Virus record (IMG/VR): IMGVR_UViG_3300017917_000952
Coordinates: 1 to 64,000 of that record
Strand: one strand, 5' to 3'
Length of the DNA: 64,000 bases
The position numbers were made by a program, and so were the translations under genes. The notes below the pieces were generated by a model, which worked only from the letters and a program-made list of their open reading frames with translations, was not told the origin of the DNA and did not search any database. This document shows positions 41 to 62,716 of this stretch, piece by piece (position 1 is the first letter of the stretch; every line of letters begins with the position of its first letter).

Positions 41-97
41 GGTTAAAATAATTTCAATAGTGCCATCTCCTTCTGTTTTCATGTGTTAAATATGCAC

Positions 98-1477
98 ATG
101 GCAAACTTAGGAAATTTAATCAAGCTCAATCGCAACCAATCGAAGGTCGCTATTATTGACGAAGATGCTCGCGTAACCTATAGACAATTGCATAATATGT
201 CTAACTATGCCGCATTTCATCTCAAATCAAAAGGTATTGCACCCGGTGACAGAGTAGCCATTAAAGGTGTTAATACCATAGGCTATGTAGCGGCATATTT
301 AGGAATTTTAAAACTAGGAGCCGTAGCGGTTCTCATAAATGTAAAACTTCCACAATCGCAGGTTGAGTTTATTTTAAAAGACAGCAATGTTAAATTTTTA
401 TGGGAAGATCCAAAAATCCCTAGCGATGTGTTTGTTGAATTTACTCCACACGAAGCTCAGGACAGTGACCCGGCTATTGTAATGTATACATCGGGTTCTA
501 CAAGCCAACCCAAAGGAGTCATTCTTCCGCATAGCCACAAATGGATTATTGAAAAGAAATCAAATTATCCGGCGGCTGTTCATAGGAGAGCGATTGTTGC
601 CGCACCATTATATCATATGAATGGCCTAAGCAATACCGAAACTACACTAAGCGGCCACGGTACTCTTATTCTTTTAAAAAGATTTGACCCGATACAATTC
701 TTAAAAAGAATAGCCTACCACCGAGTAAATTCTATTACATCTGTTCCTACGATGTTGGCATTGATACTTCAACATCAAGATGTAATGAAAAAATTAGATC
801 TAAAATGTGTTACACATATTGGAATGGCTTCTGCACCTGTTAGCAGACATTTATTTGAATCTCTAAAGGCTGCATTTCCAAAAGCAGTAATCAACAATGC
901 TTATGGAATAACTGAAGTTAGTCCGGGAATGTTTGGAAGGCATCCGACTCTACCCACGCCCGATATGAGTGTTGGATATCCAATACCTGGAATTGAATAT
1001 AGGCTAGTAGACGGAATTCTACAGGTAAAGAGTCCATCTATGTTCTTAAAATATAATAACCTAGCAACAAAAAACATAACCGAAGATGGGTTTTTTATCA
1101 CAAATGATTTGTTCAAAATAGACGAAAACGGGTTTTACTTTTTCTTAGGCCGCGCCGATGACATGTTTGTTAGCGGCGGGAATAATGTATACCCCCGTCA
1201 ATTAGAGTCAGTATTAGAAGAACACCCGTTAGTCAAACAAGCGGCAGTCATTGGCCTAGAAGATGATATTAAGGGGATGAAACCGTACGCATTTGTGGTA
1301 TCTACTGCCGGCGAGGACGAACTAAAAAGACATGTATTAGAATCGTTGCCGCCGAGTCATTGTCCTAGAAAAATTTGGTCGGTTATGACGATGCCACTAA
1401 CCAGCGTAAACAAAATAGATAAAAATGCACTAAAGAATCAAGCAAAAGAGTTATTAAATGTTGTTCAACAGAATTGA
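98..1477 (+). CDS. AMP-binding acyl-CoA synthetase (adenylate-forming enzyme)
   Basis: YTSGSTSQPKG AMP-binding loop, YGITE, FITNDL, GRADD and C-terminal NKIDK lysine. Start placed at ATG 98, 5 nt after TTAAATA (track start 83). Confidence 0.9.
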   Translation: MANLGNLIKLNRNQSKVAIIDEDARVTYRQLHNMSNYAAFHLKSKGIAPGDRVAIKGVNTIGYVAAYLGILKLGAVAVLINVKLPQSQVEFILKDSNVKFLWEDPKIPSDVFVEFTPHEAQDSDPAIVMYTSGSTSQPKGVILPHSHKWIIEKKSNYPAAVHRRAIVAAPLYHMNGLSNTETTLSGHGTLILLKRFDPIQFLKRIAYHRVNSITSVPTMLALILQHQDVMKKLDLKCVTHIGMASAPVSRHLFESLKAAFPKAVINNAYGITEVSPGMFGRHPTLPTPDMSVGYPIPGIEYRLVDGILQVKSPSMFLKYNNLATKNITEDGFFITNDLFKIDENGFYFFLGRADDMFVSGGNNVYPRQLESVLEEHPLVKQAAVIGLEDDIKGMKPYAFVVSTAGEDELKRHVLESLPPSHCPRKIWSVMTMPLTSVNKIDKNALKNQAKELLNVVQQN

Positions 1478-2195
1478 GAATCTTAACGGTCAGGTAGCCG
1501 TAATTACCGGAGCCAACGGCGGTGTCGGGTTTGCTGTTGCAGAAAGACTAGCAAAGTCGGGTGCTCAGATTATCGGAATAGTTAGACGCAACGTAGAAGA
1601 AATGCAGGCAAGGTTAGATCAACTAGGGCCAGGTCATAGAGCCCTATTAGCGGATGTAACTAGCAGCGAACAATTAATATCGGCGGCGGCCCAGATCACA
1701 CAGTGCGATATACTTATTAATAATGCCGGCGCTTCTACTCCTATCGATCATAAAAATTTAACCTCGCTGACGGACGAAATTTTTGAAAACGTAGTAAAGG
1801 TTAATCTAAACGGCGTATTTTACACTACTAAGGCATTTTTACCTCTCCTACGAAAGAGTCAGAATGCACTGGTTGTTAATATAAGTTCGGCTAGTAGTAT
1901 ACGAACAGGCGGCAGCAATGTTGCCTATGCAGCCGCAAAAGCAGGGGTTGACTCATTGACTAGAAATTTAGCAAAGGCCCTTGCTCCAATTAGAGTAGTA
2001 AGTTTAAATCCTACACTTATAAAAACTAATTTTACACAAATGCCAGACTCTTATTACCATAACGCAGGTCTAGGAACTCCATTAAAACGAGTAGTTACTG
2101 TAGAAGATGTTGCATCAACTGTAGAGGCACTGGCAACTACAGTGAGATTTGTAACCGGCAACAACATTGTCATTGACGGAGGAAGAACACTATGA
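1458..2195 (+). CDS. Short-chain dehydrogenase/reductase (SDR)
   Basis: TGANGGVG Rossmann motif, NNAG, catalytic S and YAAAK, IDGG C-terminus. Confidence 0.92.
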   Translation: MLFNRIENLNGQVAVITGANGGVGFAVAERLAKSGAQIIGIVRRNVEEMQARLDQLGPGHRALLADVTSSEQLISAAAQITQCDILINNAGASTPIDHKNLTSLTDEIFENVVKVNLNGVFYTTKAFLPLLRKSQNALVVNISSASSIRTGGSNVAYAAAKAGVDSLTRNLAKALAPIRVVSLNPTLIKTNFTQMPDSYYHNAGLGTPLKRVVTVEDVASTVEALATTVRFVTGNNIVIDGGRTL

Positions 2196-3064
2196 CTACA
2201 ATTATAACCTGTGCTATAACAGGAGCGGTCACTAGTAGAGATCAAACTCCGTATCTTCCAGTGACTCCTGAAGAGATTGCAATTAGCGCACTTGAAGCAG
2301 CAGAAGCCGGCGCGGCAGTAGCGCACATACATGTTCGAGATCCCGAAACAGGAAAACCGAGTATCAATGTAGAGTACTACAGAGATACAGTTGATAGAAT
2401 TCGTAAACAAAATAAAGACCTTTTGATTAACTTAACGACTGGGCCTGGCGCATTTTATTTGCCAAGTTTTGGTGTTAACCTAGCACAAGGTGCTCCAGGA
2501 ACTTTACTACTAGGCGCCGCAAAACGTGTAGAGCATATTCAGTTAATTAAACCCGATATCTGTAGTTTAGATTTTAATACCATGCATCAGGCCGGAGACG
2601 GTATCAGAATAAACCATAAACGTGTTACTAGAGAAATGCTAAGGTTAGTTCAAGAAGCAGGTACGAAACCAGAGTTAGAGATCTTTGATAGCGGAGACCT
2701 TCGCATAGCACAAGAGTTTGTTGCAGAAGGATTGGTAAAAGGTAAACCATTTTGGCAATTTGCCATGGGCGTTAAATATGGCTGGGGCGCAAGCACCAAT
2801 GCACTACAATATGCTTACAGAGAACTAACACCGGGATCGTTGTGGAGTGCCTTTGGCATAGGAAAAGAACAGATGCCATTTGTTGCACAGACAATGTTGT
2901 TAGGTGGGCATGTTAGGGTAGGCATGGAAGATAATATCTACACCAGTAAGGGAGTGTTAGCAAAAACTAATGCAGAATTGGTTAGTATGGCCGTTGACAT
3001 TATCAGACTATTAGGAGGCAAGGTTGCATCCTATCAAGAAGCAAGGGAAATTTTATTACAATGA
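2192..3064 (+). CDS. Beta-keto acid cleavage enzyme (BKACE/Kce, DUF849)
   Basis: ITCAITGA start, PVTPEEIA, AGAAVAHIHVRD zinc motif, PELEIFD, GGHVRVGMEDN. Confidence 0.9.
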   Translation: MTTIITCAITGAVTSRDQTPYLPVTPEEIAISALEAAEAGAAVAHIHVRDPETGKPSINVEYYRDTVDRIRKQNKDLLINLTTGPGAFYLPSFGVNLAQGAPGTLLLGAAKRVEHIQLIKPDICSLDFNTMHQAGDGIRINHKRVTREMLRLVQEAGTKPELEIFDSGDLRIAQEFVAEGLVKGKPFWQFAMGVKYGWGASTNALQYAYRELTPGSLWSAFGIGKEQMPFVAQTMLLGGHVRVGMEDNIYTSKGVLAKTNAELVSMAVDIIRLLGGKVASYQEAREILLQ

Positions 3065-3843
3065 CACAAGAAAGATTAGATACTAGACAGTCCTATTTCT
3101 ACAGGGATCATACCGGGATACGAAGAAGATACGGAATATACATGCCTGCTATTGATAGATTCCTGCATGTGTCAGAACAAGATTTATGGATGAGTCTCGA
3201 AACTGCTGAGATTCTAAGTTCCAAAGTACAAACTATGCTATATGTGCTGCCCCCTGGTTACATAAAAGTTCCCGAGTATACCGAACTTATTAATAATCAA
3301 AACTGTCTCAATTGGGGCATCTATGACAAGTCAAAATTAAAGATAGGTTCCGGCAGTGCGCTAGGTGCCAGACAGACTCCTATTATAGGTATGCTTTATC
3401 CTGATGATCGATTAGAAGAACATCAGTCTCTTCCAGAAGACTTTATCGAAGATAGTTCTATACTAATAGGTTTGAAAGACTATGCAGATTATGTATATCG
3501 AAGAGTTTTAGGAATTAGCATTGCAGTGAATTTTTATAATCCGTATTTCTCAAAGAAATTTATAGAAAAATATATCGACAATGATTGGGTAGAAAATAAA
3601 GAAAATTCAGCAGACCCTTCCTTTTCAAAAGGTATTGAATTTGAAATTAAGAAAATACTTTACCAGTGCAACTCTAAGGAAGAAGCCGAAGAAGCAATTA
3701 CTAATTTCTGGCTCGAAAATTATAGAAACGTAGGATTTATTATGGTAGGATATTATAAGGTAATCGGAGAAAGAATCCCAGAAAAACTAAGACCATACGC
3801 TTCAAATATTCACTATCTTAACCATTCAGTGTGGGTCATATAA
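3061..3843 (+). CDS. Hypothetical protein, coupled to the downstream PP-loop ATPase gene
   Basis: 260-aa ORF overlapping both neighbours; no motif recognised. Confidence 0.7.
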   Translation: MTQERLDTRQSYFYRDHTGIRRRYGIYMPAIDRFLHVSEQDLWMSLETAEILSSKVQTMLYVLPPGYIKVPEYTELINNQNCLNWGIYDKSKLKIGSGSALGARQTPIIGMLYPDDRLEEHQSLPEDFIEDSSILIGLKDYADYVYRRVLGISIAVNFYNPYFSKKFIEKYIDNDWVENKENSADPSFSKGIEFEIKKILYQCNSKEEAEEAITNFWLENYRNVGFIMVGYYKVIGERIPEKLRPYASNIHYLNHSVWVI

Positions 3844-5102: not shown

Positions 5103-6004
5103 AAAAATTTTTAGCAACCTTATTATTAGCAACTACAGCATTTGTGGCACATGCTAAAGAAAATATTACAATTTTCTATGCATGGGGTCCAGGTGACTCT
5201 GTAGCAAACTATCATCGCACTATCGCTGCTGAAGCAAACAAAATTCAAGACAAATACAATTTTATCTTTGATACCAAGCCAGGCGCAGGTGGTGCAATCG
5301 CATCTAACCACGTACTTAATACTCCTAACAGTGTATTGGCACATAGCACAGCATTTTTTGTGCGTCCTGTAGTGTTCCCTAACGAAAGTTATGATTTAAC
5401 AAAATACAAAGAACAATATGTTCACTGCATGGCCCCAATGGCTGTGACTAGTACAAAGTATAAAACTGTAAAAGATGTACCTGCCAACGCTAGTGTAGGT
5501 ATTAGCGGCCTAGGTGTTACTACACACTTAGCAGCACTAGAACTAAAGAAACGTTATCCGGATTTAAATATCGTTCCTTTTAAATCTACCAACGATAGTA
5601 TGTTAAGTATGGTAAGCGGTCAAACTGATCTACATATTGGATTTATCAGCGAAGCAGAACAATGGAGTAAAGAAAACTCTAACAGTGATCGTAAGGTAAA
5701 TGTTTTAGGTATTACTGGATCAAAAGTTGTTAATGGTTACCAACCGTTGGTTCGTCAAGGCTTCGACGCTAGTTTTGCCGACATGAATGTTGGACATCAT
5801 CTCCTAGTACCAACAACAGTCAGCGAAGAAAAGCGCAAAGAGTTTCACGCCATTTTTGCTCGTGCAGCCCAGGCTCCTAGCGTTCGTGCTGCCTATGCAG
5901 TTGACTACTGCGAACCACAGGCTGTTACCTATGACGGTTTAGACAAGTTCTTCTTGTTCCATACAAACTATTGGAAGAAGTTAGCATCTGCGGTTAAACT
6001 ATGA
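5084..6004 (+). CDS. Bug/TctC-like tripartite tricarboxylate transporter substrate-binding protein
   Basis: Signal peptide (MKKFLATLLLATTAFVAHA, likely start about 5099), KPGAGGAIA, GVTTHL, VPFKS. Confidence 0.8.
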   Translation: MDRHQMKKFLATLLLATTAFVAHAKENITIFYAWGPGDSVANYHRTIAAEANKIQDKYNFIFDTKPGAGGAIASNHVLNTPNSVLAHSTAFFVRPVVFPNESYDLTKYKEQYVHCMAPMAVTSTKYKTVKDVPANASVGISGLGVTTHLAALELKKRYPDLNIVPFKSTNDSMLSMVSGQTDLHIGFISEAEQWSKENSNSDRKVNVLGITGSKVVNGYQPLVRQGFDASFADMNVGHHLLVPTTVSEEKRKEFHAIFARAAQAPSVRAAYAVDYCEPQAVTYDGLDKFFLFHTNYWKKLASAVKL

Positions 6005-6931: not shown

Positions 6932-6956
6932 AACGTTATAAAATGGAGCCTAAACA

Positions 6957-7921: not shown

Positions 7922-7942
7922 AAAGGGCCATATGGCCCTTTT
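7922..7942 (+). terminator. Terminator / perfect 20-bp palindrome
   Basis: AAAGGGCCAT|ATGGCCCTTT just after the dctP stop. Confidence 0.8.
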
Positions 7943-7957
7943 CTTACGAGTATACCC

Positions 7958-7965
7958 TATAAATA
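7958..7965 (+). promoter_or_regulatory. T4-type late promoter TATAAATA
   Basis: Exact T4 late consensus, 4 nt before ATG 7970. Confidence 0.65.
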
Positions 7966-7969
7966 ATTC

Positions 7970-8569
7970 ATGTGGATGCCTGTTGATTTTAAAGAAATTG
8001 GAAAAATAGATCCGGAAATATTAAATCCGGTTATAGAACTATTTGATACAATAAACTGGAATGATTTTTCATACAGACGTCCAGAACCTAAACTGCGTGC
8101 CGGAAAATTACTGGCTTTGCCTTACCTGTTATACAAATATGATCATCCTGTTTATACCGAAGAGCAGCAGATGATAATTAAGGCCGTGGAACCAGTAGTA
8201 GATGAGATTATTAAACTATTCCCCGGTTATGTAAAAGTTCGCGGAGAAATTGCAACATTATTACCGGGGGTTGAATTACCTTTACATACTGATATTGTTT
8301 GGTTTCATAAGTATTGTAGGCGAATACACATTCCTATAATAACTAACAAGGACTGTTACCAACAATTTGAAAATAGAACTTCTCATTTAGAGTTTGCAAA
8401 AATATACGAGATTAATAATAGAATAATGCACGGTGCTGGTAATCTCGGAAACAGCCAACGCATACACTTAATCCTTGACTTGCTCAGTGACAACATCTAT
8501 AATATAATTGATAAAAAAGTATATCAACTTATGACGGCGCTGCCAAAAAATGAAGTCAAAATTTATTAA
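7970..8569 (+). CDS. Aspartyl/asparaginyl beta-hydroxylase-like 2OG-Fe(II) oxygenase
   Basis: LPLHTD (HxD), RRIHIPIITN, EINNRIMHGAGN, RIHLILD. Confidence 0.8.
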   Translation: MWMPVDFKEIGKIDPEILNPVIELFDTINWNDFSYRRPEPKLRAGKLLALPYLLYKYDHPVYTEEQQMIIKAVEPVVDEIIKLFPGYVKVRGEIATLLPGVELPLHTDIVWFHKYCRRIHIPIITNKDCYQQFENRTSHLEFAKIYEINNRIMHGAGNLGNSQRIHLILDLLSDNIYNIIDKKVYQLMTALPKNEVKIY

Positions 8570-9098: not shown

Positions 9099-9570
9099 TA
9101 AATGTGTGCTTCTTTGTTGTATCTACATAGTAACTAGTGCCGTCAGCGGGCATGTGCTCTATAGAATTCTGTTCCGGAAAAATCATTAAACATTGGGGAT
9201 TAGTAATCACTGGTAAATGTATCCTAGGATACGGATCAGAATGTATGCTGTAGCAGGCCCTGGGATTCATGTACATTAATCTTGTTCTAACAATCCTATA
9301 CTCACTAAGTGATTGCAACCATTGATCAACAAAACCGCCCCGTAGTTTAGGGTGAATAAATTTATACTGGGGCTCTACTATCATTCCTCCGGTTTTTCTT
9401 ATTCTGCCGGTTGACTCGTAGAACTGCTCTATGCTATCATTGTTAGGATCTTTCACCTGCAGGCCTAACTGCATAACGTTTTCTCTAAACGGAAAATTTT
9501 TGATTAGGTCGTTTATTTCGCTAACTAAGTTATAGAAATTCTCAAACTTCTTGATAGGCGTACAGATCAT
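9031..9570 (-). CDS. Aspartyl/asparaginyl beta-hydroxylase-like 2OG-Fe(II) oxygenase
   Basis: YSIHSD, RIHLPVITN, DTTKKHTFIN, RIHLV. Start placed at 9570, 5 nt after TTAAATA on the minus strand. Confidence 0.75.
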   Translation of the reverse strand: MICTPIKKFENFYNLVSEINDLIKNFPFRENVMQLGLQVKDPNNDSIEQFYESTGRIRKTGGMIVEPQYKFIHPKLRGGFVDQWLQSLSEYRIVRTRLMYMNPRACYSIHSDPYPRIHLPVITNPQCLMIFPEQNSIEHMPADGTSYYVDTTKKHTFINCSEVPRIHLVGVVLPPRPTS

Positions 9571-9609
9571 ATCAATATTTAATAACATTCTAACATAAGG
9601 AAAAAATAG

Positions 9610-14210: not shown

Positions 14211-15337
14211 TATTCGCTCACAAATATTTTCTTGGTAGGAATTAATCTATAACCTTTGTTCCACCACATTAGGTTAGGACGCAACTGCGACAGATGCTCT
14301 GCGGCCATATATTCGTATCTGTCTTTAAACTCTTTTAGTTCAGGGTACTGCCATAACCAGAAGTGTTTATCAGATCTATTAAGTCTAAGAGGTTTCTCTG
14401 CCTGGAATCTATCTGTCCAATTAGTATATAGAACATGGCGTAAAAACTTTTGTTGTTCTTTTTGTTTGAAGTAAAACATTTCAAGACTGTTCTTTACATC
14501 TCTTGTAAATGCTAATTCTGATAATTCTTTTTCTCTCTTGAATACTTTAATTGCTGCATTGGCCATTTCAAACGCAAGAATAGGAAATTTCGGTGTCCAG
14601 TAAAAATATTCCGTGCCGTAGATATTACCAGGATAAGGTGTTCCCATTGTAACAGCAGAGTCACAGAACCACATATAATTTTTATTGTCTTCGAAATAGG
14701 TCTTAGGTTTGTCAACACCGTATATCGATGCTACTTTCTTACCTTGCTCAGACAATTTAATTTCATTTGGACTCCATACTGCTAAAGAAGTAACTTCTAC
14801 ATCGTGCCAGTGATTAACTAGGCCAAATATTTCTTCTTGACCGATGGATGTTCTATCTTTAAACCAATCAACAATTTCAATTTTTATGTTAGGGTGTTTT
14901 TGAGCGACTTCTTCCAGGACCGGTTTGATAGCGTAGTCCCATTCACTCAAATAATTTACCGCGGTTTTTTCTTCTGTATTAGGTACGTAGATACCTCGGT
15001 CAATAACATCCGACGCCCATTTTACACAAATTTCATCTAGATGTATTCCGTTATCTAAAAATGAACGTAATACATTATAACTGTCAGCGCCGCCCGAGAA
15101 GTATAAAATAAGATAATCGTAACTGTCTCGCAACTGCTGAGCACGTTGTTTATATAGTTCATTGAGACTAAATTTACCAATCAATGATCTATCAAAATTT
15201 TGCCACACATCATCAAAAAATCTATACTGAACAGTGTTGTTTGTTTTAGTTGCATAGAGCAAAGCCTGATATTTGTTTATAAACTTTTGATCAGCGACTT
15301 CCCAATATCCTTGAGGGTAATTTTCTATAAATTGCAT
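14210..15337 (-). CDS. PP-loop ATPase (asparagine synthase-like)
   Basis: LYFSGGADS PP-loop, GVDKP, EYFYW; TATAAATA 8 nt upstream on the minus strand. Confidence 0.7.
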   Translation of the reverse strand: MQFIENYPQGYWEVADQKFINKYQALLYATKTNNTVQYRFFDDVWQNFDRSLIGKFSLNELYKQRAQQLRDSYDYLILYFSGGADSYNVLRSFLDNGIHLDEICVKWASDVIDRGIYVPNTEEKTAVNYLSEWDYAIKPVLEEVAQKHPNIKIEIVDWFKDRTSIGQEEIFGLVNHWHDVEVTSLAVWSPNEIKLSEQGKKVASIYGVDKPKTYFEDNKNYMWFCDSAVTMGTPYPGNIYGTEYFYWTPKFPILAFEMANAAIKVFKREKELSELAFTRDVKNSLEMFYFKQKEQQKFLRHVLYTNWTDRFQAEKPLRLNRSDKHFWLWQYPELKEFKDRYEYMAAEHLSQLRPNLMWWNKGYRLIPTKKIFVSE

Positions 15338-15397
15338 AGCAGTGATATTTATAGGCGGGTGTTTTGTAAAAGCATAAATATTGAAAAGGGGAACACC

Positions 15398-16406: not shown

Positions 16407-16414
16407 TATAAATA
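16407..16414 (+). promoter_or_regulatory. T4-type late promoter TATAAATA
   Basis: Exact consensus, 7 nt before ATG 16422. Confidence 0.65.
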
Positions 16415-16421
16415 GCAGACT

Positions 16422-16529
16422 ATGAATATTTTTAAAAGAATCATTAACTGGTACAAATTAAGAAAGCAGCGCAAAGAACTAGAAAAACGCCTGGCCGAAC
16501 TTAGAAAACGAGATCCATTCATCTATTAA
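16422..16529 (+). CDS. 35-aa basic peptide upstream of the carbamoyltransferase (absent from the ORF track)
   Basis: MNIFKRIINWYKLRKQRKELEKRLAELRKRDPFIY; fills the gap between the promoter and ATG 16531. Confidence 0.7.
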   Translation: MNIFKRIINWYKLRKQRKELEKRLAELRKRDPFIY

Positions 16530-16530
16530 C

Positions 16531-17985
16531 ATGATACTAGGTATTAACGGTCAGAATCATGATGCAAGCATGGCCTTGGTAGATCAAGAATCTATCTTAT
16601 GGGCTGCACACGCAGAACGGTATTCTAGAACTAAAAACGATAAACTCCTTAATACTGATATGATTAAGGAAATGTACGAGTACGGTGCTCCAAAGGTTGC
16701 GGTATGGTTTGAAAAACCTTTCTCAAAGTCTATGAGAAAACTTTACAGCGGAGAACGACCCTGGTGGTGCAATCCTAAGGAAGAACTAAAGCGTGTCGGT
16801 CTAGGTCATCTAAGCCTAGAAAAAGTAGGACACCACGAAAGTCATGCAGCCGCAGGATTCTATACAAGTAAGTTTCAAGATGCGGCAATTCTTGTAGTAG
16901 ATGCAATAGGAGAATGGGACTCTGCCAGTATGTGGCACGGAACAGCCTACGGTCTTAATAAAATCTGGGATATGAAATATCCAGACAGCATGGGGTTATT
17001 CTACACAGCATTTACACAGTTCTTAGGACTGAAACCCAACGAAGAAGAATATATCTTAATGGGTATGGCTGCACTAGGCAAGCCTATAGTTGTAGAACAA
17101 ATTAAAAAAGATTTCTTTGATAGTTTTGGTCCACCGTTTATTAAATTAAAACACAATTTACATAGAGGTTGTCGTTGGTGGGAAGCACCTAAGGGCGTGA
17201 CTAATTTTGATATTGCAGCCAGTGTTCAATACATAATGGAAGAATATCTCTTAGATACCGTTGCTGCCCTAAGATCAAATGTAGCCAGTGATAATTTAGT
17301 ATTCATGGGCGGTGTTGCTCTTAACTGTGTTGCAAATAGTATCATTGCAAAACAAAAATATTTTAAAAATATTTGGGTAATGCCTAATCCTGGCGATGCA
17401 GGCAGTTCTATTGGTGCGGTTGCAGCGTTAGAAAGAAAGCACCTCGACTGGCGACATCCTTATCTAGGCACCTCTATTAATCGTGTATTAGATATAGAAG
17501 GCGTTGTTAAAGAACTTATGGCAGGTAATGTTGTTGCAGTCGCTAATGGTCGGGCAGAATTTGGGCCAAGGGCATTGGGTAATAGAAGTTTACTCTGCGA
17601 TCCTCGTGGCCCGGACGCTAAGGCCAGAATGAATAGGTTAAAGCGAAGGGAAGAATTTAGACCCTTTGCTCCTGCTATCCTAGAGGAACATGCACATTAT
17701 TATTTTGATATGGTTGTACCTACTAGTCCATACATGCAGTTTGTTATGCGGTGCAAGGATCCTAAGAATTTCCCGGGTATTTGCCACTACGACAATACCA
17801 GTAGGGTGCAGACAGTTAACCACGCAGATAATCCAAATTTTAGGGCTATTTTGGAATTATGGTACGAAAAAACCGGTTGTCCGATGCTTATGAATACTAG
17901 TCTAAATGTAAAAGGCGAGCCCTTGGTAAATAGTTTAAGCGATGCTGTACGTTGGGAAAAGTTAAATGGCGTAAAAGTATTTTGA
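16531..17985 (+). CDS. O-carbamoyltransferase (NodU/CmcH/TobZ family)
   Basis: HDAS, ERYSR, HHESHAAAGF, GGVALNC, GDAG, GRAEFGPRALGNRS, KRREEFRPFAP, LMNTSLN. Confidence 0.95.
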   Translation: MILGINGQNHDASMALVDQESILWAAHAERYSRTKNDKLLNTDMIKEMYEYGAPKVAVWFEKPFSKSMRKLYSGERPWWCNPKEELKRVGLGHLSLEKVGHHESHAAAGFYTSKFQDAAILVVDAIGEWDSASMWHGTAYGLNKIWDMKYPDSMGLFYTAFTQFLGLKPNEEEYILMGMAALGKPIVVEQIKKDFFDSFGPPFIKLKHNLHRGCRWWEAPKGVTNFDIAASVQYIMEEYLLDTVAALRSNVASDNLVFMGGVALNCVANSIIAKQKYFKNIWVMPNPGDAGSSIGAVAALERKHLDWRHPYLGTSINRVLDIEGVVKELMAGNVVAVANGRAEFGPRALGNRSLLCDPRGPDAKARMNRLKRREEFRPFAPAILEEHAHYYFDMVVPTSPYMQFVMRCKDPKNFPGICHYDNTSRVQTVNHADNPNFRAILELWYEKTGCPMLMNTSLNVKGEPLVNSLSDAVRWEKLNGVKVF

Positions 17986-18794: not shown

Positions 18795-18800
18795 GTAGGT

Positions 18801-38643: not shown

Positions 38644-38694
38644 CTTCAGTAAAACCACTTTTTGGTAAATACACTACAAAGTGGTTTATTGAGG
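38644..38694 (+). promoter_or_regulatory. Stem-loop with GTAAATA in the loop and the GAGG RBS in the 3' arm, upstream of the giant fibre gene
   Basis: AAACCACTTT (38652-61) pairs with AAAGTGGTTT (38678-87); the stem extends as CTTCAG/TTGAGG. Confidence 0.65.
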
Positions 38695-38701
38695 AAAATC
38701 A

Positions 38702-41700
38702 ATGTCTTTACAACTAATTAATTTAGGAGAAGGTGCGAACAGCGGCACCGGGGATAGCATCCTAACTGCGTTTCAAAAGGTAAACGATAACTTCGTTCAA
38801 ATTTACGGAACCGTAAATCCTTCGGAACTAAACTATGATGCCCTGGCTTCTATAATTTTAAACAACACATCGAGCTTTGTCTCACTGTTTTCTAGTCTCG
38901 GAATTACCGCAGATAATGTAAATTACGATTCCTTATTAGATCTACTTGAACTAAATTCCTCTACATTCGCAACATTTTTATCCGGGTTAGGCATTACCGG
39001 CACAACAATTTCTACTGCAACCTCTTTGAGTTCTGGACAATTAACACAGGTCCAGGGATTAATTGCAACTAGCACAGGTAGTATTGCCTTAAGATTTAAC
39101 CAGTTAGAAACCACATTTAACAATTCGTTAACCAACCTCAATAATGCAATTAATACCAAGGCTAGCATAAGCGACGTTAGCATTGCGATCAGTAACAGTA
39201 CAGCAAGTCTAGCCACACGAATCAGTGGACTACAAACCAACTTTACTCAACTACAAGGTTCATTAACTAACTTAACATCTGTTGTTAACACTAAGGCCAG
39301 CATCACTGATGTTCAGACCGCTGTAAGCAATAGCACAGCAAGTTTGGCAACAAGAATTAGTGGCCTACAAACTAACTTTACTCAATTACAAGGCTCGTTA
39401 ACTAACCTAACCTCTGTAATTAACAGTAAGGCCAGTATCACTGATGTGCAGACCGCTATCAGTAATGCAACCGCTAGTATTGCAATTAGAGTCAGTGGAC
39501 TCGAAACAAATTATACCAACGTCAACAATAGTTTAACCAACGTCGGTAACTGGATTAATATTGGTAGCAATGCTGCTATCGTAAATCTACAAAGTGCTAT
39601 CAGTAATAGCACAGCAAGTATTGCCACACAGATCAGTGGATTACAAACTAATTTTACACAAATACAAGGCTCATTAACTGGATTAACTTCAGTTATCAAC
39701 AGCAAAGCCAGCATTTCGGACGTACAAACTGCTATCAGTAATGCGACCGCAAGTATCGCAACTCGTGTTACAGGTCTTGAAACTAATTTCAGTGCTGTCA
39801 ACAACAGTTTAACCAATGTCGGCGTATGGGCCAACTTGACCAGCAACGCTGCGATTACCAATTTACAAACTGCAATTAGCAATAGCACAGCAAGTATTGC
39901 CACTCAGATCAGTGGGCTACAGACTAATTTCAATGCAGTCAGTAACAGCCTAACAAACGCAGGAACCTGGATTAATCTAACCAGCAACGCTGCGATTACC
40001 AATTTACAAAGTGCTATCAGTAATAGCACAGCAAGTATCGCCACACAGGTTAGTGGACTACAGACAAACTTCACCCAACTCGAAGGATCGTTAACTGGCC
40101 TAACATCTGTTGTTAACAGCAAGGCCAACATTACAGATGTTCAAACTGCTATCAGTAATGCGACTGCAAGTATCGCAACTCGAGTTAGCGGACTAGAAAC
40201 AAACTATACAAACGTATCTAACAGTCTAACTAATGCAGGCAGTTGGATCGATATCGGTAGCAACGCTGCTATCACCAATTTACAAAATTCTATTAGTAGT
40301 AGTACAGGTAGTTTTGCCACACAGATTAGTGGATTACAGACCAACTTCACCCAGCTCGAAGGGTCTCTAACAGGATTAACCTCTGTCGTTAACAGCAAGG
40401 CTAACATTACAGATGTTCAAACTGCTATCAGCAACGCAACCGCAAGTATTGCAACTAGGGTATCTGGTCTAGAGACCAATTACACCAGTGTTGATAACAG
40501 TCTAACTAATGCAGGAAATTGGATTAACTTAACTAGCAATGCTGCAATTACCAATTTACAAAATTCTATTAGTAGTAGTACAGGTAGTTTTGCTACACAG
40601 ATTAGTGGATTACAGACTAACTTTACTCAGTTAGAAGGATCTCTAACAGGATTAACTTCTGTTGTCAGTACTAAGGCCAGCATAACAGATGTTCAAACTG
40701 CTATCAGCAATAGCACAGCAAGTTTGGCGTCAAGGACATCTAGCCTAGAGACTAACTTTACAAATGTTAATAACAGTTTGACCAACGTCGGCGATTGGGC
40801 TAATATCAGTACCAACGCTGCAATTACAAACCTACAAACTGCAATCAGCAATAGTACTGGTAGTTTGGCAACACAGGTAAGCGGCCTACAGACCCAATAT
40901 AATGACCTGGCTAATTCTGTTACTACGTTCTCGACTTACACTCAAGAAGTTATCAGCATCAGCAACAGTTTTACCAGTGTTCTAACCAGTATCAACAATC
41001 TGCAGACTGCGTTTAATACGTTATCGACCGGTACAGGTGCAACTGTAGAATATGTTGACACCGCAATTAGTAATAGCACAGGTAGTTTTGCTAGTACGCT
41101 GAATACTCTTCAGACTAACTTTAATACCGTACAGAACACACTGACTAATATTAACAATAGTCTAACAAACATTGGCAATTGGTCGAATCTTGCTAACAAT
41201 TCTGCAATTACAGGTATTAACAACAGTTTGACCAATGTTGGCACATGGGCAGATATTCAAAACAACCTTGCTATTTTAGGCATTAACAACAGTTTAACCA
41301 ATGTCGGTAACTGGGTCAATTTAAGTAGCAATGCTGCGATTACAAACCTACAAACTGCAATCAGCAACAGTACTGGTAGTTTAGCCAGCAGTGTTAACGC
41401 TTTACAGACAAGTTTCAGTTCACAACAGAGCACAATTAATGACCTAAACAATACATTAACCAATGTTAATAACAGTCTAACTAATTTGAATAATAGTTTG
41501 ACTAATGTAGCAACATGGGTCAATTTAAGTAGCAATGCTGCGATCACAAACCTACAAACTGCAATCAGCAACAGCACCGCAAGTATCGCATCAACTGTTA
41601 ACACACTACAGACAAACTATACCAGCCAACAGACTACTATTAATGCAATTAATAACACCCTGACAAACGTTAATAACAGTCTAACTAATTTGAATAATAG

Positions 41701-47287: not shown

Positions 47288-47529
47288 AAACAATTAACAT
47301 TCAAACTATTGCTGTAGAGTTTCCTAATCAGGTAACCAAAGTAACTTTGCAAGTTGTAGAGACTACAGGTATTATTACAAAGGTAACTGATACATTAACA
47401 TTAAACGTTCCCGGAATTTATCAAAGTTTAAATTCTGAACTTTACAATATTGTACTAACAGAACTAGTAAATGCCGGTTACGACATACAAGCAGGTGTCC
47501 CGGGCGACCAGCCGACCCAGACACAATAA
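47284..47529 (+). CDS. Small tail-associated protein, possibly a chaperone
   Basis: ATGA-coupled 81-aa ORF ending the fibre operon. Confidence 0.5.
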   Translation: MKTINIQTIAVEFPNQVTKVTLQVVETTGIITKVTDTLTLNVPGIYQSLNSELYNIVLTELVNAGYDIQAGVPGDQPTQTQ

Positions 47530-47539
47530 ATAGTATGTT

Positions 47540-49519
47540 ATGGCAATATCATGGGTAACCCCTGAAGGTACACTTTTTACTTGCACAGCCGGTGCTGTGA
47601 TAAGCAGTTCGGTGCAGGCAAACAATGCATCGTCATATTCTCTCCTATGCGGAAAGTTACCCAGCGGACTAAGTTTGAGTACCGCAGGAAATATTACAGG
47701 AACCCCAGATCCTGTTAATTATACTACTACTTCGAGATTTGTAATTAGAGCAACTGATGCAACAACATCAAAAGACCGAACATTTAGTATTTCAGTATGG
47801 GATGCTACTCCAGTATTATGGAACGACGACGAGTTCAACGTTAGCAGTGGTGTTTTTAGAAAACTGTTAATCAACAAAGACTATGTAGAAATACAACTGT
47901 CCGTTAACAACGAACTTCCCTCAACCTTTACAATAGACAAAACTACTGGGAATTTACCGTTTGGAATGAAAATGGACTCCAATGGATTGATTACTGGAAG
48001 TCCGAAATTAATCCTTGCTCCTGGTATCGTAGAGGATTTTACTTTCGATGTTGTAGCATTTGACGGTGTCAATGAATACAGACAAACATTTAGTTTTTCA
48101 GTATTAGACAGTTTTACATTCACTGTAGATAATACAACCCTGTTTCTAGGAACAAATACTACTTCGTTAATTAATCTCGGTAACACGGGTACAGTTACCT
48201 TATCGAATTTACAGCCTGCAGAATTTGTCACCGATGGTAACCTAGGAATAGCACTTGCCGACGATCGACAATATCTTTCTGTTCGTGCATATGATCCAAA
48301 CCCCGGTATGGGCCCGTTAGTGTATACCGCACTAACTCCCTTACCCCCAGGATTATCGCTAGACAGAGGTATAGGGTATCTATATGGTAACCTAAGCCCA
48401 CAAGCGGATTTCTCTCACATTTATAATTTTTCGATAGAAGCGAAAAAATCAAATATCAGGTCAGGCGAGTTTGTTCTAAGTACTGGAACATTTTATCTAA
48501 CAGTAGTAAATCAATACTACAATAATGTAGTATGGCCTGAATCAAATTTAGGTAATATCTTAGAAGGTACAGTTAGTGAACTAGCCGTAACTGCTAAACA
48601 AAAGGATGCAACTTGGGACTTAAACTATTATCTAGTTCCGGATAGTCAACTACCAGACGGTCTTACATTATCTACTAGCACAGGCAATATTATCGGAAAC
48701 GCTACTACCAGCGGAAACTTTACATTTAGAATTGCTGCTTCTACCTCTACATACCAACCACACGAATTGTTGTGGCCTGTATTATCGAGCCCTGTTTCGT
48801 TCAATACATTTAATTTGACTGTAAGTCCTATCTCGGGAGAATTTACCAGTATTTGGGCTAAGCCATTCTTAATTCCTTCCCAACGAGCAGTGTGGGAAAC
48901 ATTTATCAATAATGAAAATGTATTCTTACCTGATATACTATATCGTGCAGATGACCCTATTTTTGGTGTTCAAAAGGACTTAAGAGTATTTTTAGAATTT
49001 GGCATAGAACGTGTAGAAATAGGTGAGTACGCTTCTGCACTATATCAAAATCTATACGAAAGAAGATTAACCTTTGGTAAAGTTAAGTCTGCTATAGCCA
49101 AGGACAAGAAAGGCAATCACGTTTATGATGCTATCTATGTTGATGTAGTTGACGAACTGGAGGGATCAAAAACGTCTATAGAAATAAACGGTGTCACGTA
49201 TTACCCAGGTAGCGTTGATAATATAAGAAATTCTTTACAATCTGTTGTTCTAGACGACGGCGGCGAGATTAAAGTCGACGGAAGATTTTTACCAAAATTT
49301 ATGACTACTGTTGCACCAGATCAGCCATATGGCTATATTCGTGCAGCCGTATTATGTTATACTAAGCCAGGAGAATCTAACAAAATCCTTAACAGGATAC
49401 GTGCATCCAAGTTTAACTTCAACAACTTGAGCTTCTTTATAGACCGCTTGATTGTGCAAAACAGTTTAGATCAAACAGGCACAACCTACATAGCATTTAA
49501 TAGACAGCCCATCGGTTAA
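47540..49519 (+). CDS. Ig-like (He_PIG/cadherin) repeat structural protein, baseplate-wedge-like
   Basis: Repeated LPSGLSLSTAGNITGTP / LPPGLSLD / LPDGLTLSTSTGNIIG motifs; AATAAATA 7 nt upstream. Confidence 0.75.
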   Translation: MAISWVTPEGTLFTCTAGAVISSSVQANNASSYSLLCGKLPSGLSLSTAGNITGTPDPVNYTTTSRFVIRATDATTSKDRTFSISVWDATPVLWNDDEFNVSSGVFRKLLINKDYVEIQLSVNNELPSTFTIDKTTGNLPFGMKMDSNGLITGSPKLILAPGIVEDFTFDVVAFDGVNEYRQTFSFSVLDSFTFTVDNTTLFLGTNTTSLINLGNTGTVTLSNLQPAEFVTDGNLGIALADDRQYLSVRAYDPNPGMGPLVYTALTPLPPGLSLDRGIGYLYGNLSPQADFSHIYNFSIEAKKSNIRSGEFVLSTGTFYLTVVNQYYNNVVWPESNLGNILEGTVSELAVTAKQKDATWDLNYYLVPDSQLPDGLTLSTSTGNIIGNATTSGNFTFRIAASTSTYQPHELLWPVLSSPVSFNTFNLTVSPISGEFTSIWAKPFLIPSQRAVWETFINNENVFLPDILYRADDPIFGVQKDLRVFLEFGIERVEIGEYASALYQNLYERRLTFGKVKSAIAKDKKGNHVYDAIYVDVVDELEGSKTSIEINGVTYYPGSVDNIRNSLQSVVLDDGGEIKVDGRFLPKFMTTVAPDQPYGYIRAAVLCYTKPGESNKILNRIRASKFNFNNLSFFIDRLIVQNSLDQTGTTYIAFNRQPIG

Positions 49520-55006: not shown

Positions 55007-55024
55007 TAGACAATAAATACCTAA

Positions 55025-55780
55025 ATGAAGCATATATTTAGGTTAACTGAAAAATCAGTCCTGATCAACAGATATATTCTGTTATCAGGATTTCTCTTAT
55101 TGCTGTATTACGGAACACTAATTCACTGGCTCGTTGTTTTAGGTGTTTATCTAGTCAAGGGACTTATGGGTACTGCGGTTATTCACAGAGGACTTTCTCA
55201 CAGAGCCTTCAAAATGAATAAATTGGTTGAGAGATTGTTTGGAGGATTTTCTCTGTTAGGGACAAATTCTACTCCTATTTCATGGGTAGCAGTTCATCGA
55301 CAGCACCATAGATTTTCTGATCACCAAGGAGATTTACATAGTCCGCAAATATACCCTTATTGGGATGTTCAATTAATGAAGTTCCACGATCCTATAGATC
55401 TAACTTATGCTCCGGATTTAGTTCGTCAACCTTACTATACATGGCTTTTTAGATACCACTGGGCAATCAGTTATAGTATTGCCTTACTATTATTAATAAT
55501 TGATCCTATGCTACTTTTATGTGCGTGGCTTGCTCCAAATTTTATACAATCATATGCAGGAACTACTGTAAACGCACTTAACCATATTAATTTTGGTTAC
55601 AGAAATTTTGCTACCAAAGATAACAGCCATAACAACTGGATTACAGGAATCTTCTGTTTAGGTGAAGGATGGCATAACAATCACCACCACGACCCTGCAA
55701 ATCCAAACTTCGGAGTTAAATGGTGGGAGTTTGATTTAGGATATCAATTTGTAAAACTAATTCAACAAAAAACCGCATAG
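55025..55780 (+). CDS. Membrane fatty-acid (acyl-CoA delta-9 type) desaturase
   Basis: His boxes HRGLSH, HRQHH, GEGWHNNHH; WWEFD; hydrophobic helices. Confidence 0.92.
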   Translation: MKHIFRLTEKSVLINRYILLSGFLLLLYYGTLIHWLVVLGVYLVKGLMGTAVIHRGLSHRAFKMNKLVERLFGGFSLLGTNSTPISWVAVHRQHHRFSDHQGDLHSPQIYPYWDVQLMKFHDPIDLTYAPDLVRQPYYTWLFRYHWAISYSIALLLLIIDPMLLLCAWLAPNFIQSYAGTTVNALNHINFGYRNFATKDNSHNNWITGIFCLGEGWHNNHHHDPANPNFGVKWWEFDLGYQFVKLIQQKTA

Positions 55781-61456: not shown

Positions 61457-61457
61457 T

Positions 61458-62330
61458 TTAAATTCCTAGTTGTTCTCTAATTAAAGATACAGGTATATAT
61501 TGAGATACCGGATCTCCTAATTCTTTCCTTCGTGGATGTACATAGTTAATAGTGAAATCGGCTGTTTTTAAATTTTCAAAGCCGTTAAACTTTTTTCGTC
61601 GTTTCATCTCGGGCCAATTTTTATGATACACAAACATTTTATCATAACTAGTATCATTGCCCCAAACGTTAACAAAATAAGAAGGATCTTTATGCATATA
61701 CTGTATTAACTTATCGTTTAGATAAGATGCATAAAGTTCAGAATTCTGCATATGAAAGAATGGAAAATGTAGTTTTTTGTTATTTTTCAACCATTCCACA
61801 CACATAAAAAAATCACTTTTAAAGTTTATACATATCTCGTTATTCTTAGTTATGTATGTCTGTTCTCCGCCACCTAAAACTGTGGTTCCTCCAAGAGATT
61901 CTGCTAGTTCAAAAAGGTATATCTGTTGAAATCTAAATGTGCGCCACGACCGATATCCTTGTTCTATATAGAAGGGAATATTATTTCTAATAAAGAAAGA
62001 AATATCAAAATCTACAATCTTATGAGGAATATTGTAGGCCTTACAAAATTCTCTAGCATAAACTATGTCGTGTTCATTAGTTCCAGCATTATGTCTGAGA
62101 GTTAATGCTGTAAATTCTATACCTGCTTTAATAAAACTTCTAGCAGCAACTTCACCGTCTATCCCGCCGCTTAGACATAGGAATAAAGGCTTGTCAGTAA
62201 GAGCTCTAATATTTTTTGCTGTTTGAATTAATTCACTTTTCCAATCTAACAGCGGGCGGCTTATGGGATTGAAATTTATCTTAAAGGTGCCGTCCTGGTT
62301 AAGTAGATAAGTAAAGTTTACATTATTCAT
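61458..62330 (-). CDS. PP-loop ATPase (asparagine synthase-like), paralogue B
   Basis: CLSGGIDGE; shares IEQGY.(S/T)WRTFRFQQ.YLFELAESLG with paralogue A. Confidence 0.7.
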   Translation of the reverse strand: MNNVNFTYLLNQDGTFKINFNPISRPLLDWKSELIQTAKNIRALTDKPLFLCLSGGIDGEVAARSFIKAGIEFTALTLRHNAGTNEHDIVYAREFCKAYNIPHKIVDFDISFFIRNNIPFYIEQGYRSWRTFRFQQIYLFELAESLGGTTVLGGGEQTYITKNNEICINFKSDFFMCVEWLKNNKKLHFPFFHMQNSELYASYLNDKLIQYMHKDPSYFVNVWGNDTSYDKMFVYHKNWPEMKRRKKFNGFENLKTADFTINYVHPRRKELGDPVSQYIPVSLIREQLGI

Positions 62331-62344
62331 GGGTAGAGGTATTT

Positions 62345-62716
62345 ATGTTAAATTTAATGGTTAAATCAAAAATTCACAGGGCAACAGTTACAGATGGAAA
62401 TCTTGCATACAAGGGAAGTATAACAGTAGATAGGAAGTTAATGAAGGCAGCAAATTTGCGACCTTTTGAATTCGTTCATGTTAACAATCTAAGCAATGCC
62501 CAACACTGGGAAACTTATGTAATTCCTGGAAACGACGGAGAGATTATCCTAAACGGGCCACCTGCAAGATTATTTCAAAAGGGCGACAAAGTTGTTATAT
62601 TAGGGTTCAGTTATCTATCAAACGACGAATTATCTACATTTGAGCACGTAGATGTAATGGTTACAGAAACTAACGAAATCACTAACGTGATCGTTTCAAA
62701 AAGCGATTTTGAATAA
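62345..62716 (+). CDS. panD: Aspartate 1-decarboxylase
   Basis: KSKIHRATVT, YKG|SITVD self-cleavage site, ETYVI (Tyr58), GDKVVI; GAGGT RBS. Confidence 0.9.
   Translation: MLNLMVKSKIHRATVTDGNLAYKGSITVDRKLMKAANLRPFEFVHVNNLSNAQHWETYVIPGNDGEIILNGPPARLFQKGDKVVILGFSYLSNDELSTFEHVDVMVTETNEITNVIVSKSDFE

What the first reader, a model, noticed from the sequence alone, without database searches (positions are those of the whole stretch)
86..62347. Late promoters placed to give leaderless mRNAs for accessory genes
Seen: a (T/A)TAAATA-type box lies only 4-9 nt before a start codon with no Shine-Dalgarno at eight loci. These are 86-92/ATG 98, 7958-65/7970, minus 9582-76/9570, minus 15353-46/15337, 16407-14/16422, 47525-32/47540, 55012-19/55025 and minus 62347-40/62330. 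Seven of the eight head accessory units. Known: T4 late initiation occurs about 6 nt after the box, and leaderless mRNAs are translated by 70S ribosomes without an SD. Inference: a minimal promoter-plus-ATG cassette lets the phage add new genes as late, leaderless units. This may also make them resistant to anti-SD or host translation shut-off.
Basis: partly seen in the sequence, partly recalled or inferred. Interest (0 to 1): 0.68.

Follow-up and report, generated by a model that had tools for sequence, protein, structure and literature searches.

The report
Late promoters fused to start codons
In this uncultured freshwater giant phage and dozens of its relatives, a T4-like late promoter box (TAAATA) lies 4 to 8 bases before the ATG of many genes, including core virion genes, so these late messages probably carry almost no leader and no ribosome-binding site; this layout is not seen in T4 or in the cultured relatives checked.

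Summary
All eight boxes sit at the stated coordinates, 4-9 nt before an ATG with no Shine-Dalgarno (SD). In the window, 8 of 41 TAAATA copies precede a long-ORF ATG by 3-9 nt, against 3.5% for control hexamers (p = 1e-4). In the whole 207-kb contig, TAAATA is the top-ranked of all 4096 hexamers at that position, ahead of AAGGAG.

The contig encodes a gp55-like late sigma factor. The same box also lies 15-64 nt upstream of SD-led virion genes, as T4 late promoters do.

The strongest evidence is comparative. In 75 of 78 relatives, terL is preceded by a covarying terminator hairpin, a T-run, an invariant TAAATA, a variable spacer (5 nt in 66 of the 75) and the ATG.

The accessory-gene reading fails. 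The same layout heads terL, tail tube, head-tail adaptor, baseplate wedge and other virion genes. It is a general late-gene design of this clade. The T4 region and the parts of four cultured relatives I sampled show it only at background level.

No RNA data exist, so start sites and leaderless translation are inferred, not shown. I rate it a new variant of a known kind, moderately high interest.

The parts
86..100 (+). Box TTAAATA (86-92), 5-nt spacer, ATG 98. It heads an AMP-binding enzyme gene (98-1477) and a run of metabolic genes extending to 7904.
   Evidence: The Pfam AMP-binding match starts at residue 11, counted from ATG 98.
15..40 (+). Intrinsic-terminator-like hairpin (stems 15-22 and 27-34, loop TTCG) plus T-run 34-40. 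It is the same type as the terminator in front of terL.
   Evidence: Sequence read; compare alignment A1.
7925..7972 (+). Cassette: GC hairpin 7925-7938 with T-run 7939-7942, box TATAAATA 7958-7965, 4-nt spacer, ATG 7970 (gene 7970-8569).
   Evidence: Relative locus L113/L220 has the same layout: terminator, TTAAATA, 4 nt, ATG.
9568..9582 (-). Box TTAAATA (9582-9576), 5-nt spacer, ATG 9570 (gene 9031-9570). It diverges from gene 9610 across a 39-nt gap.
   Evidence: The gene is real: 73% aa identity over its full length in relative L118, which keeps TTAAATA + 4 nt + ATG.
15335..15353 (-). Box TATAAATA (15353-15346), 8-nt spacer, ATG 15337 (gene 14210-15337, 375 aa).
   Evidence: Relative L117 (70% aa identity) keeps ATAAATA + 7 nt + ATG; relative L116 (63%) has no box.
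16407..16533 (+). Box TATAAATA (16407-16414), 7-nt spacer, ATG 16422 of a conserved 35-codon ORF (16422-16529). Its stop lies 1 nt before the SD-less ATG 16531 of a carbamoyltransferase gene.
   Evidence: In relative G005 the small ORF is conserved, many of the differences being synonymous, but its box is 17 nt from the ATG.
47525..47542 (+). Box AATAAATA (47525-47532), 7-nt spacer, ATG 47540 (659-aa protein with Ig-like He_PIG domains). The TAA inside the box is the stop codon of the upstream gene 47284-47529.
   Evidence: No relatives were found.
55012..55027 (+). Box AATAAATA (55012-55019), 5-nt spacer, ATG 55025 (251 aa).
   Evidence: Several distant homologues (28-41% identity) in other large phage contigs also carry a box 4-5 nt before their ATG; others use an SD.
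62328..62347 (-). Box CATAAATA (62347-62340), 9-nt spacer, ATG 62330 (gene 61458-62330). It diverges from gene 62345 across a 14-nt gap. The sixth nt after the box is an A, so a 4-nt leader is expected.
   Evidence: No relatives were found.
38666..38704 (+). Example of the leadered class: TAAATA 30 nt upstream of the SD-led ATG 38702 of a 2009-aa tail-like protein. Other examples have the box starting at 6896, 24627, 31920, 32209, 44707, 49544, 51789, 56687 and 62714.

Best explanation
TAAATA is the core -10-type element of this phage's late promoters. It is read by host RNA polymerase carrying the phage's gp55-like sigma, with no -35 element.

The promoter is only 6-8 bp long, so the phage places it in two ways:
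- Leadered class: 15-64 nt upstream of a normal SD-led gene, as in T4.
- Abutting class: 4-8 nt upstream of the ATG, often straight after an intrinsic terminator or inside a 14-39 nt divergent gap.

In the abutting class, transcription should start on the A of the ATG or within about 3 nt of it. The resulting late mRNA is leaderless or nearly so, has no SD, and would be translated through recognition of its 5'-terminal AUG.

About 12% of genes on the contig, and about 25% of ORFs around terL in relatives, use this layout. They include core virion and packaging genes.

Shown here: the motif, its position, its enrichment, its conservation, and the presence of the sigma factor. Inferred: the start site, the late timing, and the mode of translation.
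For: 1. A gp55-family sigma is encoded at contig 122255-123172 (phrog_12791 E = 2e-86, phrog_234 E = 2e-26). It is also present in 4 of 5 relatives' contigs.

2. TAAATA is the rarest of the 15 permutations of its composition: 110 copies against 137-396. Yet 23-25 copies lie 3-9 nt before long-ORF ATGs, and about 27 more lie 15-64 nt upstream of gene starts.

3. Spacer lengths peak at 5 and 7 nt. In T4 the box occupies -13 to -6, so a 5-nt spacer puts +1 on the A of the ATG.

4. The base before the ATG is a pyrimidine in 21 of 24 box genes, against 37 of 86 SD-led genes (p = 8e-5). This is the usual preference at a transcription start. The start codon is ATG in 24 of 26 box genes.

5. Genomic context demands a promoter at many of these sites. 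Nine sites are first genes in divergent gaps of 14-39 nt, and four follow terminators.

6. terL cassette: 75 of 78 relatives (63-92% aa identity) have TAAATA 4-7 nt before the ATG, 66 of them at exactly 5 nt. The box and the ATG are invariant and the spacer sequence is free. The upstream hairpin is 99.6% paired, 6 of 8 pairs show compensatory changes, and 0 of 500 shuffles match it.

7. Replication in other sequence. In the loci around terL of relatives, 194 of 782 first-ATG starts carry the box. In an independent 270-kb relative, 18 of 111 TAAATA copies abut an ATG.

8. Promoters near the sigma70 consensus form a separate, SD-led class. Eleven of the 23 lie in the 200-207 kb region, which has no start-proximal TAAATA.
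Against: - There is no transcript data. No public RNA run holds this phage, so the start site, the late timing and the leaderless state are inferred from T4 geometry.
- No gp45 clamp was found and only a weak gp33-like hit (E = 0.02). The contig is about 58% complete, so these absences are weak evidence.
- Several abutting boxes sit inside operons, and in some the TAA or ATAA doubles as the stop codon of the upstream gene (47540, 64407, 115275, 134641, 72872). There, read-through transcripts with translational coupling could also serve.
- In the 7-nt class, spacer position 5 is almost always A. The transcript may therefore start there and carry a 3-nt leader.
- One site (16422) has a 17-nt spacer in a relative.
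- The host is unknown, so its capacity for leaderless translation is unknown.
Confidence: 0.7

Rival explanations
1. TAAATA next to the ATG acts at the RNA level, as an A/U-rich, SD-independent translation signal (for example bound by ribosomal protein S1) or as a coupling signal. The genes would then be expressed from longer read-through transcripts and not from a promoter at that spot.
For: Several sites are internal to operons, and the box overlaps the stop codon of the upstream gene. A relative keeps the 35-codon ORF but has a 17-nt SD-less leader. In PA5oct the conserved terL start also follows a terminator, with neither an SD nor a TAAATA.
Against: The identical hexamer lies 15-64 nt upstream of SD-led virion genes, where it cannot act as a ribosome site. 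Other A/U-rich permutations show no enrichment. A covarying terminator sits directly upstream in the terL cassette, so little read-through is expected. Nine sites are first genes in divergent gaps of 14-39 nt. The motif matches the T4 late box, and a gp55-like sigma is present.
Confidence: 0.15
2. The pattern is a compositional accident: A/T-rich upstream regions and TAA stop codons happen to generate TAAATA near start codons.
For: The full octamer TATAAATA is not over-represented. Some boxes contain the upstream gene's stop codon.
Against: Shuffled upstream regions give 3.0 box-carrying starts against 23 observed, with a maximum of 9 in 2000 shuffles. Thirteen control permutations give 3.5% against 19.5% in the window. 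TAAATA ranks first of 4096 hexamers. The box is invariant across 59 diverged terL upstream regions while the spacer varies freely. The pattern is replicated in a second genome.
Confidence: 0.02
3. TAAATA is a promoter or operator for a different factor, such as host sigma70 or a middle-gene activator, and not for the gp55-like sigma. The genes would then not be late genes.
For: The timing of expression is untested. The first two positions of the T4 octamer are not conserved here. No gp45 was found and the gp33 hit is doubtful.
Against: TAAATA lacks the final T of a sigma70 -10 hexamer, and no -35 element accompanies it, whereas near-consensus sigma70 promoters form a separate class elsewhere. 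The genes it serves are mostly virion and packaging genes. The Rak2-like phages CBB and GAP32, which also carry a gp55-like sigma and no detectable gp33 or gp45, have an ATAAATA motif before their structural genes (PMC5259590).
Confidence: 0.08

Closest known systems
Bacteriophage T4 late promoters (TATAAATA at -13 to -6, read by gp55 with gp33 and the gp45 clamp)
   Same: An A/T box of the -10 type with no -35 element. A gp55-family sigma is encoded. The box serves virion genes on either strand. In the leadered class the box-to-ATG distances (15-64 nt) resemble those of T4 (14-32 nt in T4 70-120 kb).
   Different: The conserved core is 6 nt (TAAATA), and the first two positions of the octamer vary. 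No gp45 was found, and the only gp33-like hit is a weak one (E = 0.02). In the T4 region sampled, 0 of 19 TATAAATA boxes lie 3-9 nt from a long-ORF ATG; here 23% of all TAAATA copies do.
ATAAATA late-promoter motif of Rak2-like jumbo phages (CBB, GAP32) and the PA5oct group
   Same: These are the closest cultured relatives (PA5oct: terL 54% and sheath 38% identity). They carry a gp55-like sigma with no detectable gp33 or gp45, and an ATAAATA motif before structural genes (PMC5259590).
   Different: In the parts of PA5oct, Phosso, Vibrio phage 2.275.O and Munch that I sampled, the box abuts an ATG only at background frequency, 0-5.6% of TAAATA copies. The papers I read do not mention leaderless late genes.
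Leaderless ('TA-led') genes of bacteria, and classic phage leaderless mRNAs such as lambda cI from PRM
   Same: A -10-like element about 10 bp upstream of the start codon, with no SD, is the accepted in silico signature of leaderless genes (PMC3160421). The AUG start codon is required.
   Different: Those cases use the host housekeeping sigma. Here the element is a phage late-sigma box, used as a class-wide design for virion genes and paired with terminators in a compact cassette. Lambda cI is cited from my own knowledge and was not checked here.

Membership tests
T4-type (gp55-dependent) late promoter | The phage encodes a gp55-family sigma factor | tested here: met
   Contig 122255-123172: phrog_12791 E = 2e-86 over positions 4-275 of 286; phrog_234 (the T4 gp55 family) E = 2e-26.
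T4-type (gp55-dependent) late promoter | A/T box TATAAATA at about -10, with no -35 element | tested here: met
   Met in relaxed form. The core TAAATA is invariant, the two positions before it vary, and no conserved upstream element appears other than terminators.
T4-type (gp55-dependent) late promoter | The box lies upstream of late (virion and packaging) genes | tested here: met
   Tail sheath, tail tube, adaptor, baseplate wedge, terL, virion proteins and a 2009-aa tail-like protein all carry it.
T4-type (gp55-dependent) late promoter | gp33 co-activator and gp45 sliding-clamp activator are present | tested here: inconclusive
   phrog_223 (gp45) gave no hit. phrog_254 (gp33) gave one weak hit, E = 0.02, at 126517-126609. 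The contig is about 58% complete. CBB-type relatives are also reported to lack detectable homologues.
T4-type (gp55-dependent) late promoter | Transcription starts about 6 nt after the box, late in infection and dependent on gp55 | not testable with these tools
   No RNA run holds the phage. The host is unknown.
Leaderless (TA-led) genes | A promoter -10 element at a fixed short distance (about 10 bp) upstream of the start codon | tested here: met
   Spacers of 4-8 nt, with modes at 5 and 7.
Leaderless (TA-led) genes | No Shine-Dalgarno sequence; AUG start codon | tested here: met
   No SD at any of the sites. Few downstream SD-led alternative starts exist. The start codon is ATG in 24 of 26 cases.
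Leaderless (TA-led) genes | The mRNA 5' end lies at or within a few nt of the AUG, and the mRNA is translated as such | not testable with these tools
   This needs 5'-end mapping and translation assays. It is indirectly supported by a pyrimidine at -1 in 21 of 24 cases.

The most novel reading that the evidence does not exclude
The phage runs two translation regimes. Early genes use strong SD leaders behind sigma70 promoters. A large share of late genes are leaderless. The switch would be functional: late in infection the phage, or a host defence, impairs SD-dependent initiation, and leaderless virion mRNAs are spared. This would make the terminator-TAAATA-N5-ATG cassette a self-contained, shut-off-proof expression module that is widespread in uncultured freshwater jumbo phages.
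Probability: 0.15. Interest if true: 0.85.

Novelty: new variant of a known kind. Interest (0 to 1): 0.62.

Why it matters
If start-site mapping confirms it, this would be a phage lineage in which a T4-type late sigma produces leaderless mRNAs as a routine design for virion genes. It would link two well-studied systems, gp55 late transcription and leaderless translation, that have not to my knowledge been connected. I found no paper doing so in five full-text searches bearing on it.

It has a practical side. Gene callers that expect an SD will mis-place these starts; my own longest-ORF calls did so at 98 and 196065. The PA5oct terL start appears to be annotated inside a terminator hairpin.

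The cassette of terminator, 6-bp promoter, 5 nt and ATG is about 45 bp long. It is an unusually compact, insulated expression unit, and it could be tested as a synthetic-biology part together with its sigma factor.

It also yields a cheap sequence signature for finding late genes and true start codons in the many uncultured relatives.

Tried and rejected
- Megablast of 20 kb against cultured phages found nothing. Protein searches were needed to place the phage near PA5oct and the Rak2-like group.
- The full T4 octamer is not enriched. I dropped it in favour of the 6-nt core.
- RNA evidence: the single run search found only DNA metagenomes (pond, freshwater, estuary, wastewater, aquaculture). 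I did not use read laying, because contigs from DNA runs cannot show a transcript start.
- gp45 (phrog_223) gave no hit. gp33 (phrog_254) gave only a weak hit. T4 RegB gave no hit. None of these absences is decisive on a contig that is 58% complete.
- Host inference from the GMP reductase gene failed. The best bacterial matches are 65-72% identical and spread over unrelated phyla.
- No relatives were found for the genes at 47540, 62330 and 16531 in viral contigs, so those three sites have no direct comparative test. The 16531 region was recovered through a syntenic relative.
- My first terminator scan timed out and the second was too strict. I rely on the covariation test for the terL hairpin.
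- I first doubted ATG 16422, because it opens only 35 codons out of frame with the carbamoyltransferase gene. Conservation, with many of the differences synonymous, shows that it is a real small gene.


Full report
**What the window is.** The 64-kb window is the left end of a 206,751-bp IMG/VR virus contig (41% GC, linear, about 58% complete by CheckV). It has no close cultured relative at the DNA level. Tail sheath and large terminase place it as a myovirus distantly related to Pseudomonas phage PA5oct (terL 54% and sheath 38% identity) and to the Atu_ph07, Phosso and Rak2-like jumbo phages. Near-identical DNA occurs in pond, freshwater, estuary, wastewater and aquaculture metagenomes. No RNA run holds it. 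The window is mostly an accessory and metabolic region. It encodes an AMP-binding enzyme, a short-chain dehydrogenase, a beta-keto-acid cleavage enzyme, TctC-like and DctP-like solute-binding proteins, a dCMP deaminase, a radical SAM enzyme, a carbamoyltransferase, a GMP reductase, a DAO oxidoreductase, UvdE and a 2009-aa tail-like protein.

**Checking the observation.** The spacers from the last A of the box to the ATG are 5, 4, 5, 8, 7, 7, 5 and 9 nt. None has an SD. Seven ATGs open ORFs of 179-659 codons and are the first or nearly the first possible start, and only the one at 55025 has any SD-led alternative start downstream (codons 25 and 47). The eighth, 16422, opens only 35 codons. That ORF is conserved in a syntenic relative, with many of the nucleotide differences at synonymous sites. 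Its stop lies 1 nt before the SD-less ATG of the carbamoyltransferase gene. The gene at 9031-9570, which my crude gene caller skipped, is real: it shares 73% identity over its full length with a relative.

**Is it more than chance?** The full T4 octamer is not enriched (4 observed, 6.2 expected). The signal is in the core TAAATA.
- In the window, 8 of 41 TAAATA copies have a long-ORF ATG 3-9 nt downstream, against 41 of 1179 (3.5%) for 13 control permutations of the same composition (odds ratio 6.7, p = 1.3e-4).
- In the contig, TAAATA is the rarest of the 15 permutations (110 copies against 137-396). It is depleted relative to Markov expectation (176-239). Yet 47% of copies fall in the 5.4% of the contig that is intergenic.
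- Twenty-three called starts carry the box at 3-9 nt, against 3.0 in shuffled upstream regions (maximum 9 in 2000 shuffles).
- Of all 4096 hexamers, TAAATA is the most frequent one 3-9 nt before an ATG that opens at least 50 codons: 25 cases, ahead of AAGGAG with 19.
- Spacers peak at 5 and 7 nt.

**What the box is.** The contig encodes a gp55-family late sigma at 122255-123172 (phrog_12791 E = 2e-86; phrog_234, the family of T4 gp55, E = 2e-26). That gene sits behind a sigma70-type promoter. TAAATA occurs in two positional classes.
- Leadered class: the box is 15-64 nt upstream of SD-led genes, such as the tail sheath, the 2009-aa and 1804-aa proteins, and ten window genes. This is the T4 pattern. 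In T4 70-120 kb the octamer lies 14-32 nt from long-ORF ATGs, apart from a single box 73 nt away, and never 3-9 nt.
- Abutting class: the box is 4-8 nt from the ATG.

Near-consensus sigma70 promoters (TTGACA, 17 nt, TATAAT) with about 20-nt leaders and AAGGAG form a separate class. They are concentrated at 200-207 kb, where no start-proximal TAAATA occurs. So the phage uses SD where it wants to, and the host can read SD.

**Why a promoter, and why leaderless.** The T4 late box occupies -13 to -6; the review numbers its first T as -13 (PMC2988020). The start is therefore the sixth nt after the box, and a 5-nt spacer puts +1 on the A of the ATG. Four further observations fit.
1. The base before the ATG is a pyrimidine in 21 of 24 box genes, against 37 of 86 SD-led genes (p = 8e-5). 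This is the usual pyrimidine(-1)/purine(+1) preference at start sites.
2. The start codon is ATG in 24 of 26 cases.
3. Nine box sites are first genes in divergent gaps of only 14-39 nt. They include two back-to-back pairs, at 163804/163834 and 194161/194192, with gaps of 29-30 nt. Four more follow an intrinsic terminator directly (7970, 139895, 170167, 173991). In both settings transcription must begin within a few nt of the ATG.
4. A -10-like signal about 10 bp before the start codon is the accepted computational signature of leaderless genes (PMC3160421).

From my own knowledge and not tested here: bacterial RNA polymerase chooses starts over a window of a few nt downstream of the -10 element. 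This would let the A of the ATG serve for spacers of 4-8 nt. In the 7-nt class, spacer position 5 is nearly always A, so a 3-nt leader is an alternative there.

**Comparative evidence.** The terL protein recovered 80 IMG/VR loci at 63-92% identity. Of the 78 with upstream sequence, 75 have TAAATA 4-7 nt before the terL ATG, and 66 of these have it at exactly 5 nt. In the alignment of 59 distinct upstream regions (A1), TAAATA and ATG are invariant. The 5-nt spacer varies freely in sequence but not in length. Just upstream lies a hairpin followed by a run of about seven T. The hairpin is 99.6% paired, 6 of its 8 pairs carry compensatory changes, and 0 of 500 shuffles reach the observed values. 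A conserved terminator therefore sits only a few nt upstream of the promoter box, which leaves no room for an SD-bearing leader.

Across all these loci, 194 of 782 first-ATG starts of ORFs of at least 80 codons carry the box, and 40% of all TAAATA copies are in that position. An independent 270-kb relative (terL 64% identity) repeats the genome-wide pattern: TAAATA is again the rarest permutation, and 18 of 111 copies abut an ATG. Four of five relatives' contigs encode the same sigma.

Several distant homologues of 55025 in other large phage contigs carry a box 4-5 nt before their ATG, while others use an SD. No relatives were found for 47540 and 62330.

The layout is not a device for accessory genes. 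Outside the window it heads terL, a tail tube protein, the head-tail adaptor, a baseplate wedge subunit, at least four virion structural proteins, a peptide deformylase and a DNA-binding protein. Its deepest conservation is at those core genes. The idea that it protects against anti-SD attack or shut-off remains speculation. I found no RegB-like nuclease and have no expression data.

**Comparison with known systems.** The promoter type is that of T4 and of Rak2-like phages. CBB and GAP32 have an ATAAATA motif before structural genes and a gp55-like sigma, with no detectable gp33 or gp45 (PMC5259590). The same holds here: no gp45 hit, and only a weak gp33-like hit. What differs is the systematic fusion of the box to the ATG. 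That fusion is at background level in T4 (0 of 19 octamers; 3 of 79 TAAATA copies), PA5oct (2 of 109), Phosso (0 of 19), Vibrio phage 2.275.O (1 of 18) and Munch (0 of 31). It reaches 23% of copies here, 40% around terL in the clade, and 14% in the loci of distant 55025 homologues. Five full-text searches bearing on the question found no paper that links gp55-type late promoters with leaderless mRNAs. The PA5oct paper reports only a TATAATA/TTGAC promoter set. The library lacks most subscription journals, so prior description cannot be excluded.

**Verdict.** The promoter-plus-ATG reading is well supported by sequence statistics, genomic context and deep conservation, but it lacks transcript evidence. 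The accessory-gene and shut-off parts are not supported. I put 0.7 on the main explanation, 0.15 on an RNA-level or coupling role, 0.08 on a different factor, and 0.02 on chance. It is a new variant of a known kind.

Noticed in passing
window 16422-16529: A conserved 35-codon ORF encodes a very basic, helix-like peptide ending in DPFIY. Its stop lies 1 nt before the SD-less ATG of the carbamoyltransferase gene (16531). The relative G005 keeps it, and many of the nucleotide differences are synonymous. It could be an upstream coupling cistron or a small functional peptide.
   Followed up: partly
window 98-10536: A run of metabolic and transport-like genes that is unusual for a phage: an AMP-binding enzyme, a short-chain dehydrogenase, a beta-keto-acid cleavage enzyme, two TctC-like solute-binding proteins and one DctP-like solute-binding protein, and a dCMP deaminase.
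   Followed up: partly
window 18766-18803: A near-consensus sigma70 promoter (TTGACA, 17 nt, TATCAT) has the ATG of a 75-aa ORF (18801) only 6 nt after the -10 element. This is a second, sigma70-type candidate for a leaderless mRNA.
   Followed up: no
contig 199000-206751 (L008): An early-type region holds 11 near-perfect sigma70 promoters, all on the minus strand. Each has a similar ACACACATC...AAGGAGCA leader in front of a small ORF, and none has a TAAATA near its start.
   Followed up: partly
contig 163805-163833 and 194162-194191 (L006, L008): Two divergent gene pairs have intergenic gaps of 29-30 nt made up almost entirely of two back-to-back TAAATA boxes, one for each direction.
   Followed up: yes
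L114 28846-28875 (PA5oct 128846-128875): The annotated terL start of PA5oct lies inside a terminator hairpin. The N-terminus conserved with this clade begins 27 nt further down (128873), about 14 nt after the T-run. That start has neither an SD nor a TAAATA, so the annotated start is probably wrong, and terL initiation in PA5oct is itself unexplained.
   Followed up: partly
contig 177602-177700 (L007): A TAAATA box is followed at once by a hairpin and a T-run, about 93 nt upstream of the SD-led gene at 177701. The transcript would begin with a stem-loop, which could be a 5' stabiliser or an attenuator.
   Followed up: no
relatives' loci L013-L092, 7-nt spacer class: In the 7-nt class the spacer is not free. 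Position 5 is A in 50 of 52 cases and is followed by C/T then T. This hints at a start 3 nt before the ATG, or it may reflect shared ancestry of two gene families.
   Followed up: partly
contig 126517-126609 (L121): A weak gp33-like match (E = 0.02) falls in a 144-aa ORF 3.4 kb downstream of the gp55-like sigma gene. It is too weak to call.
   Followed up: partly
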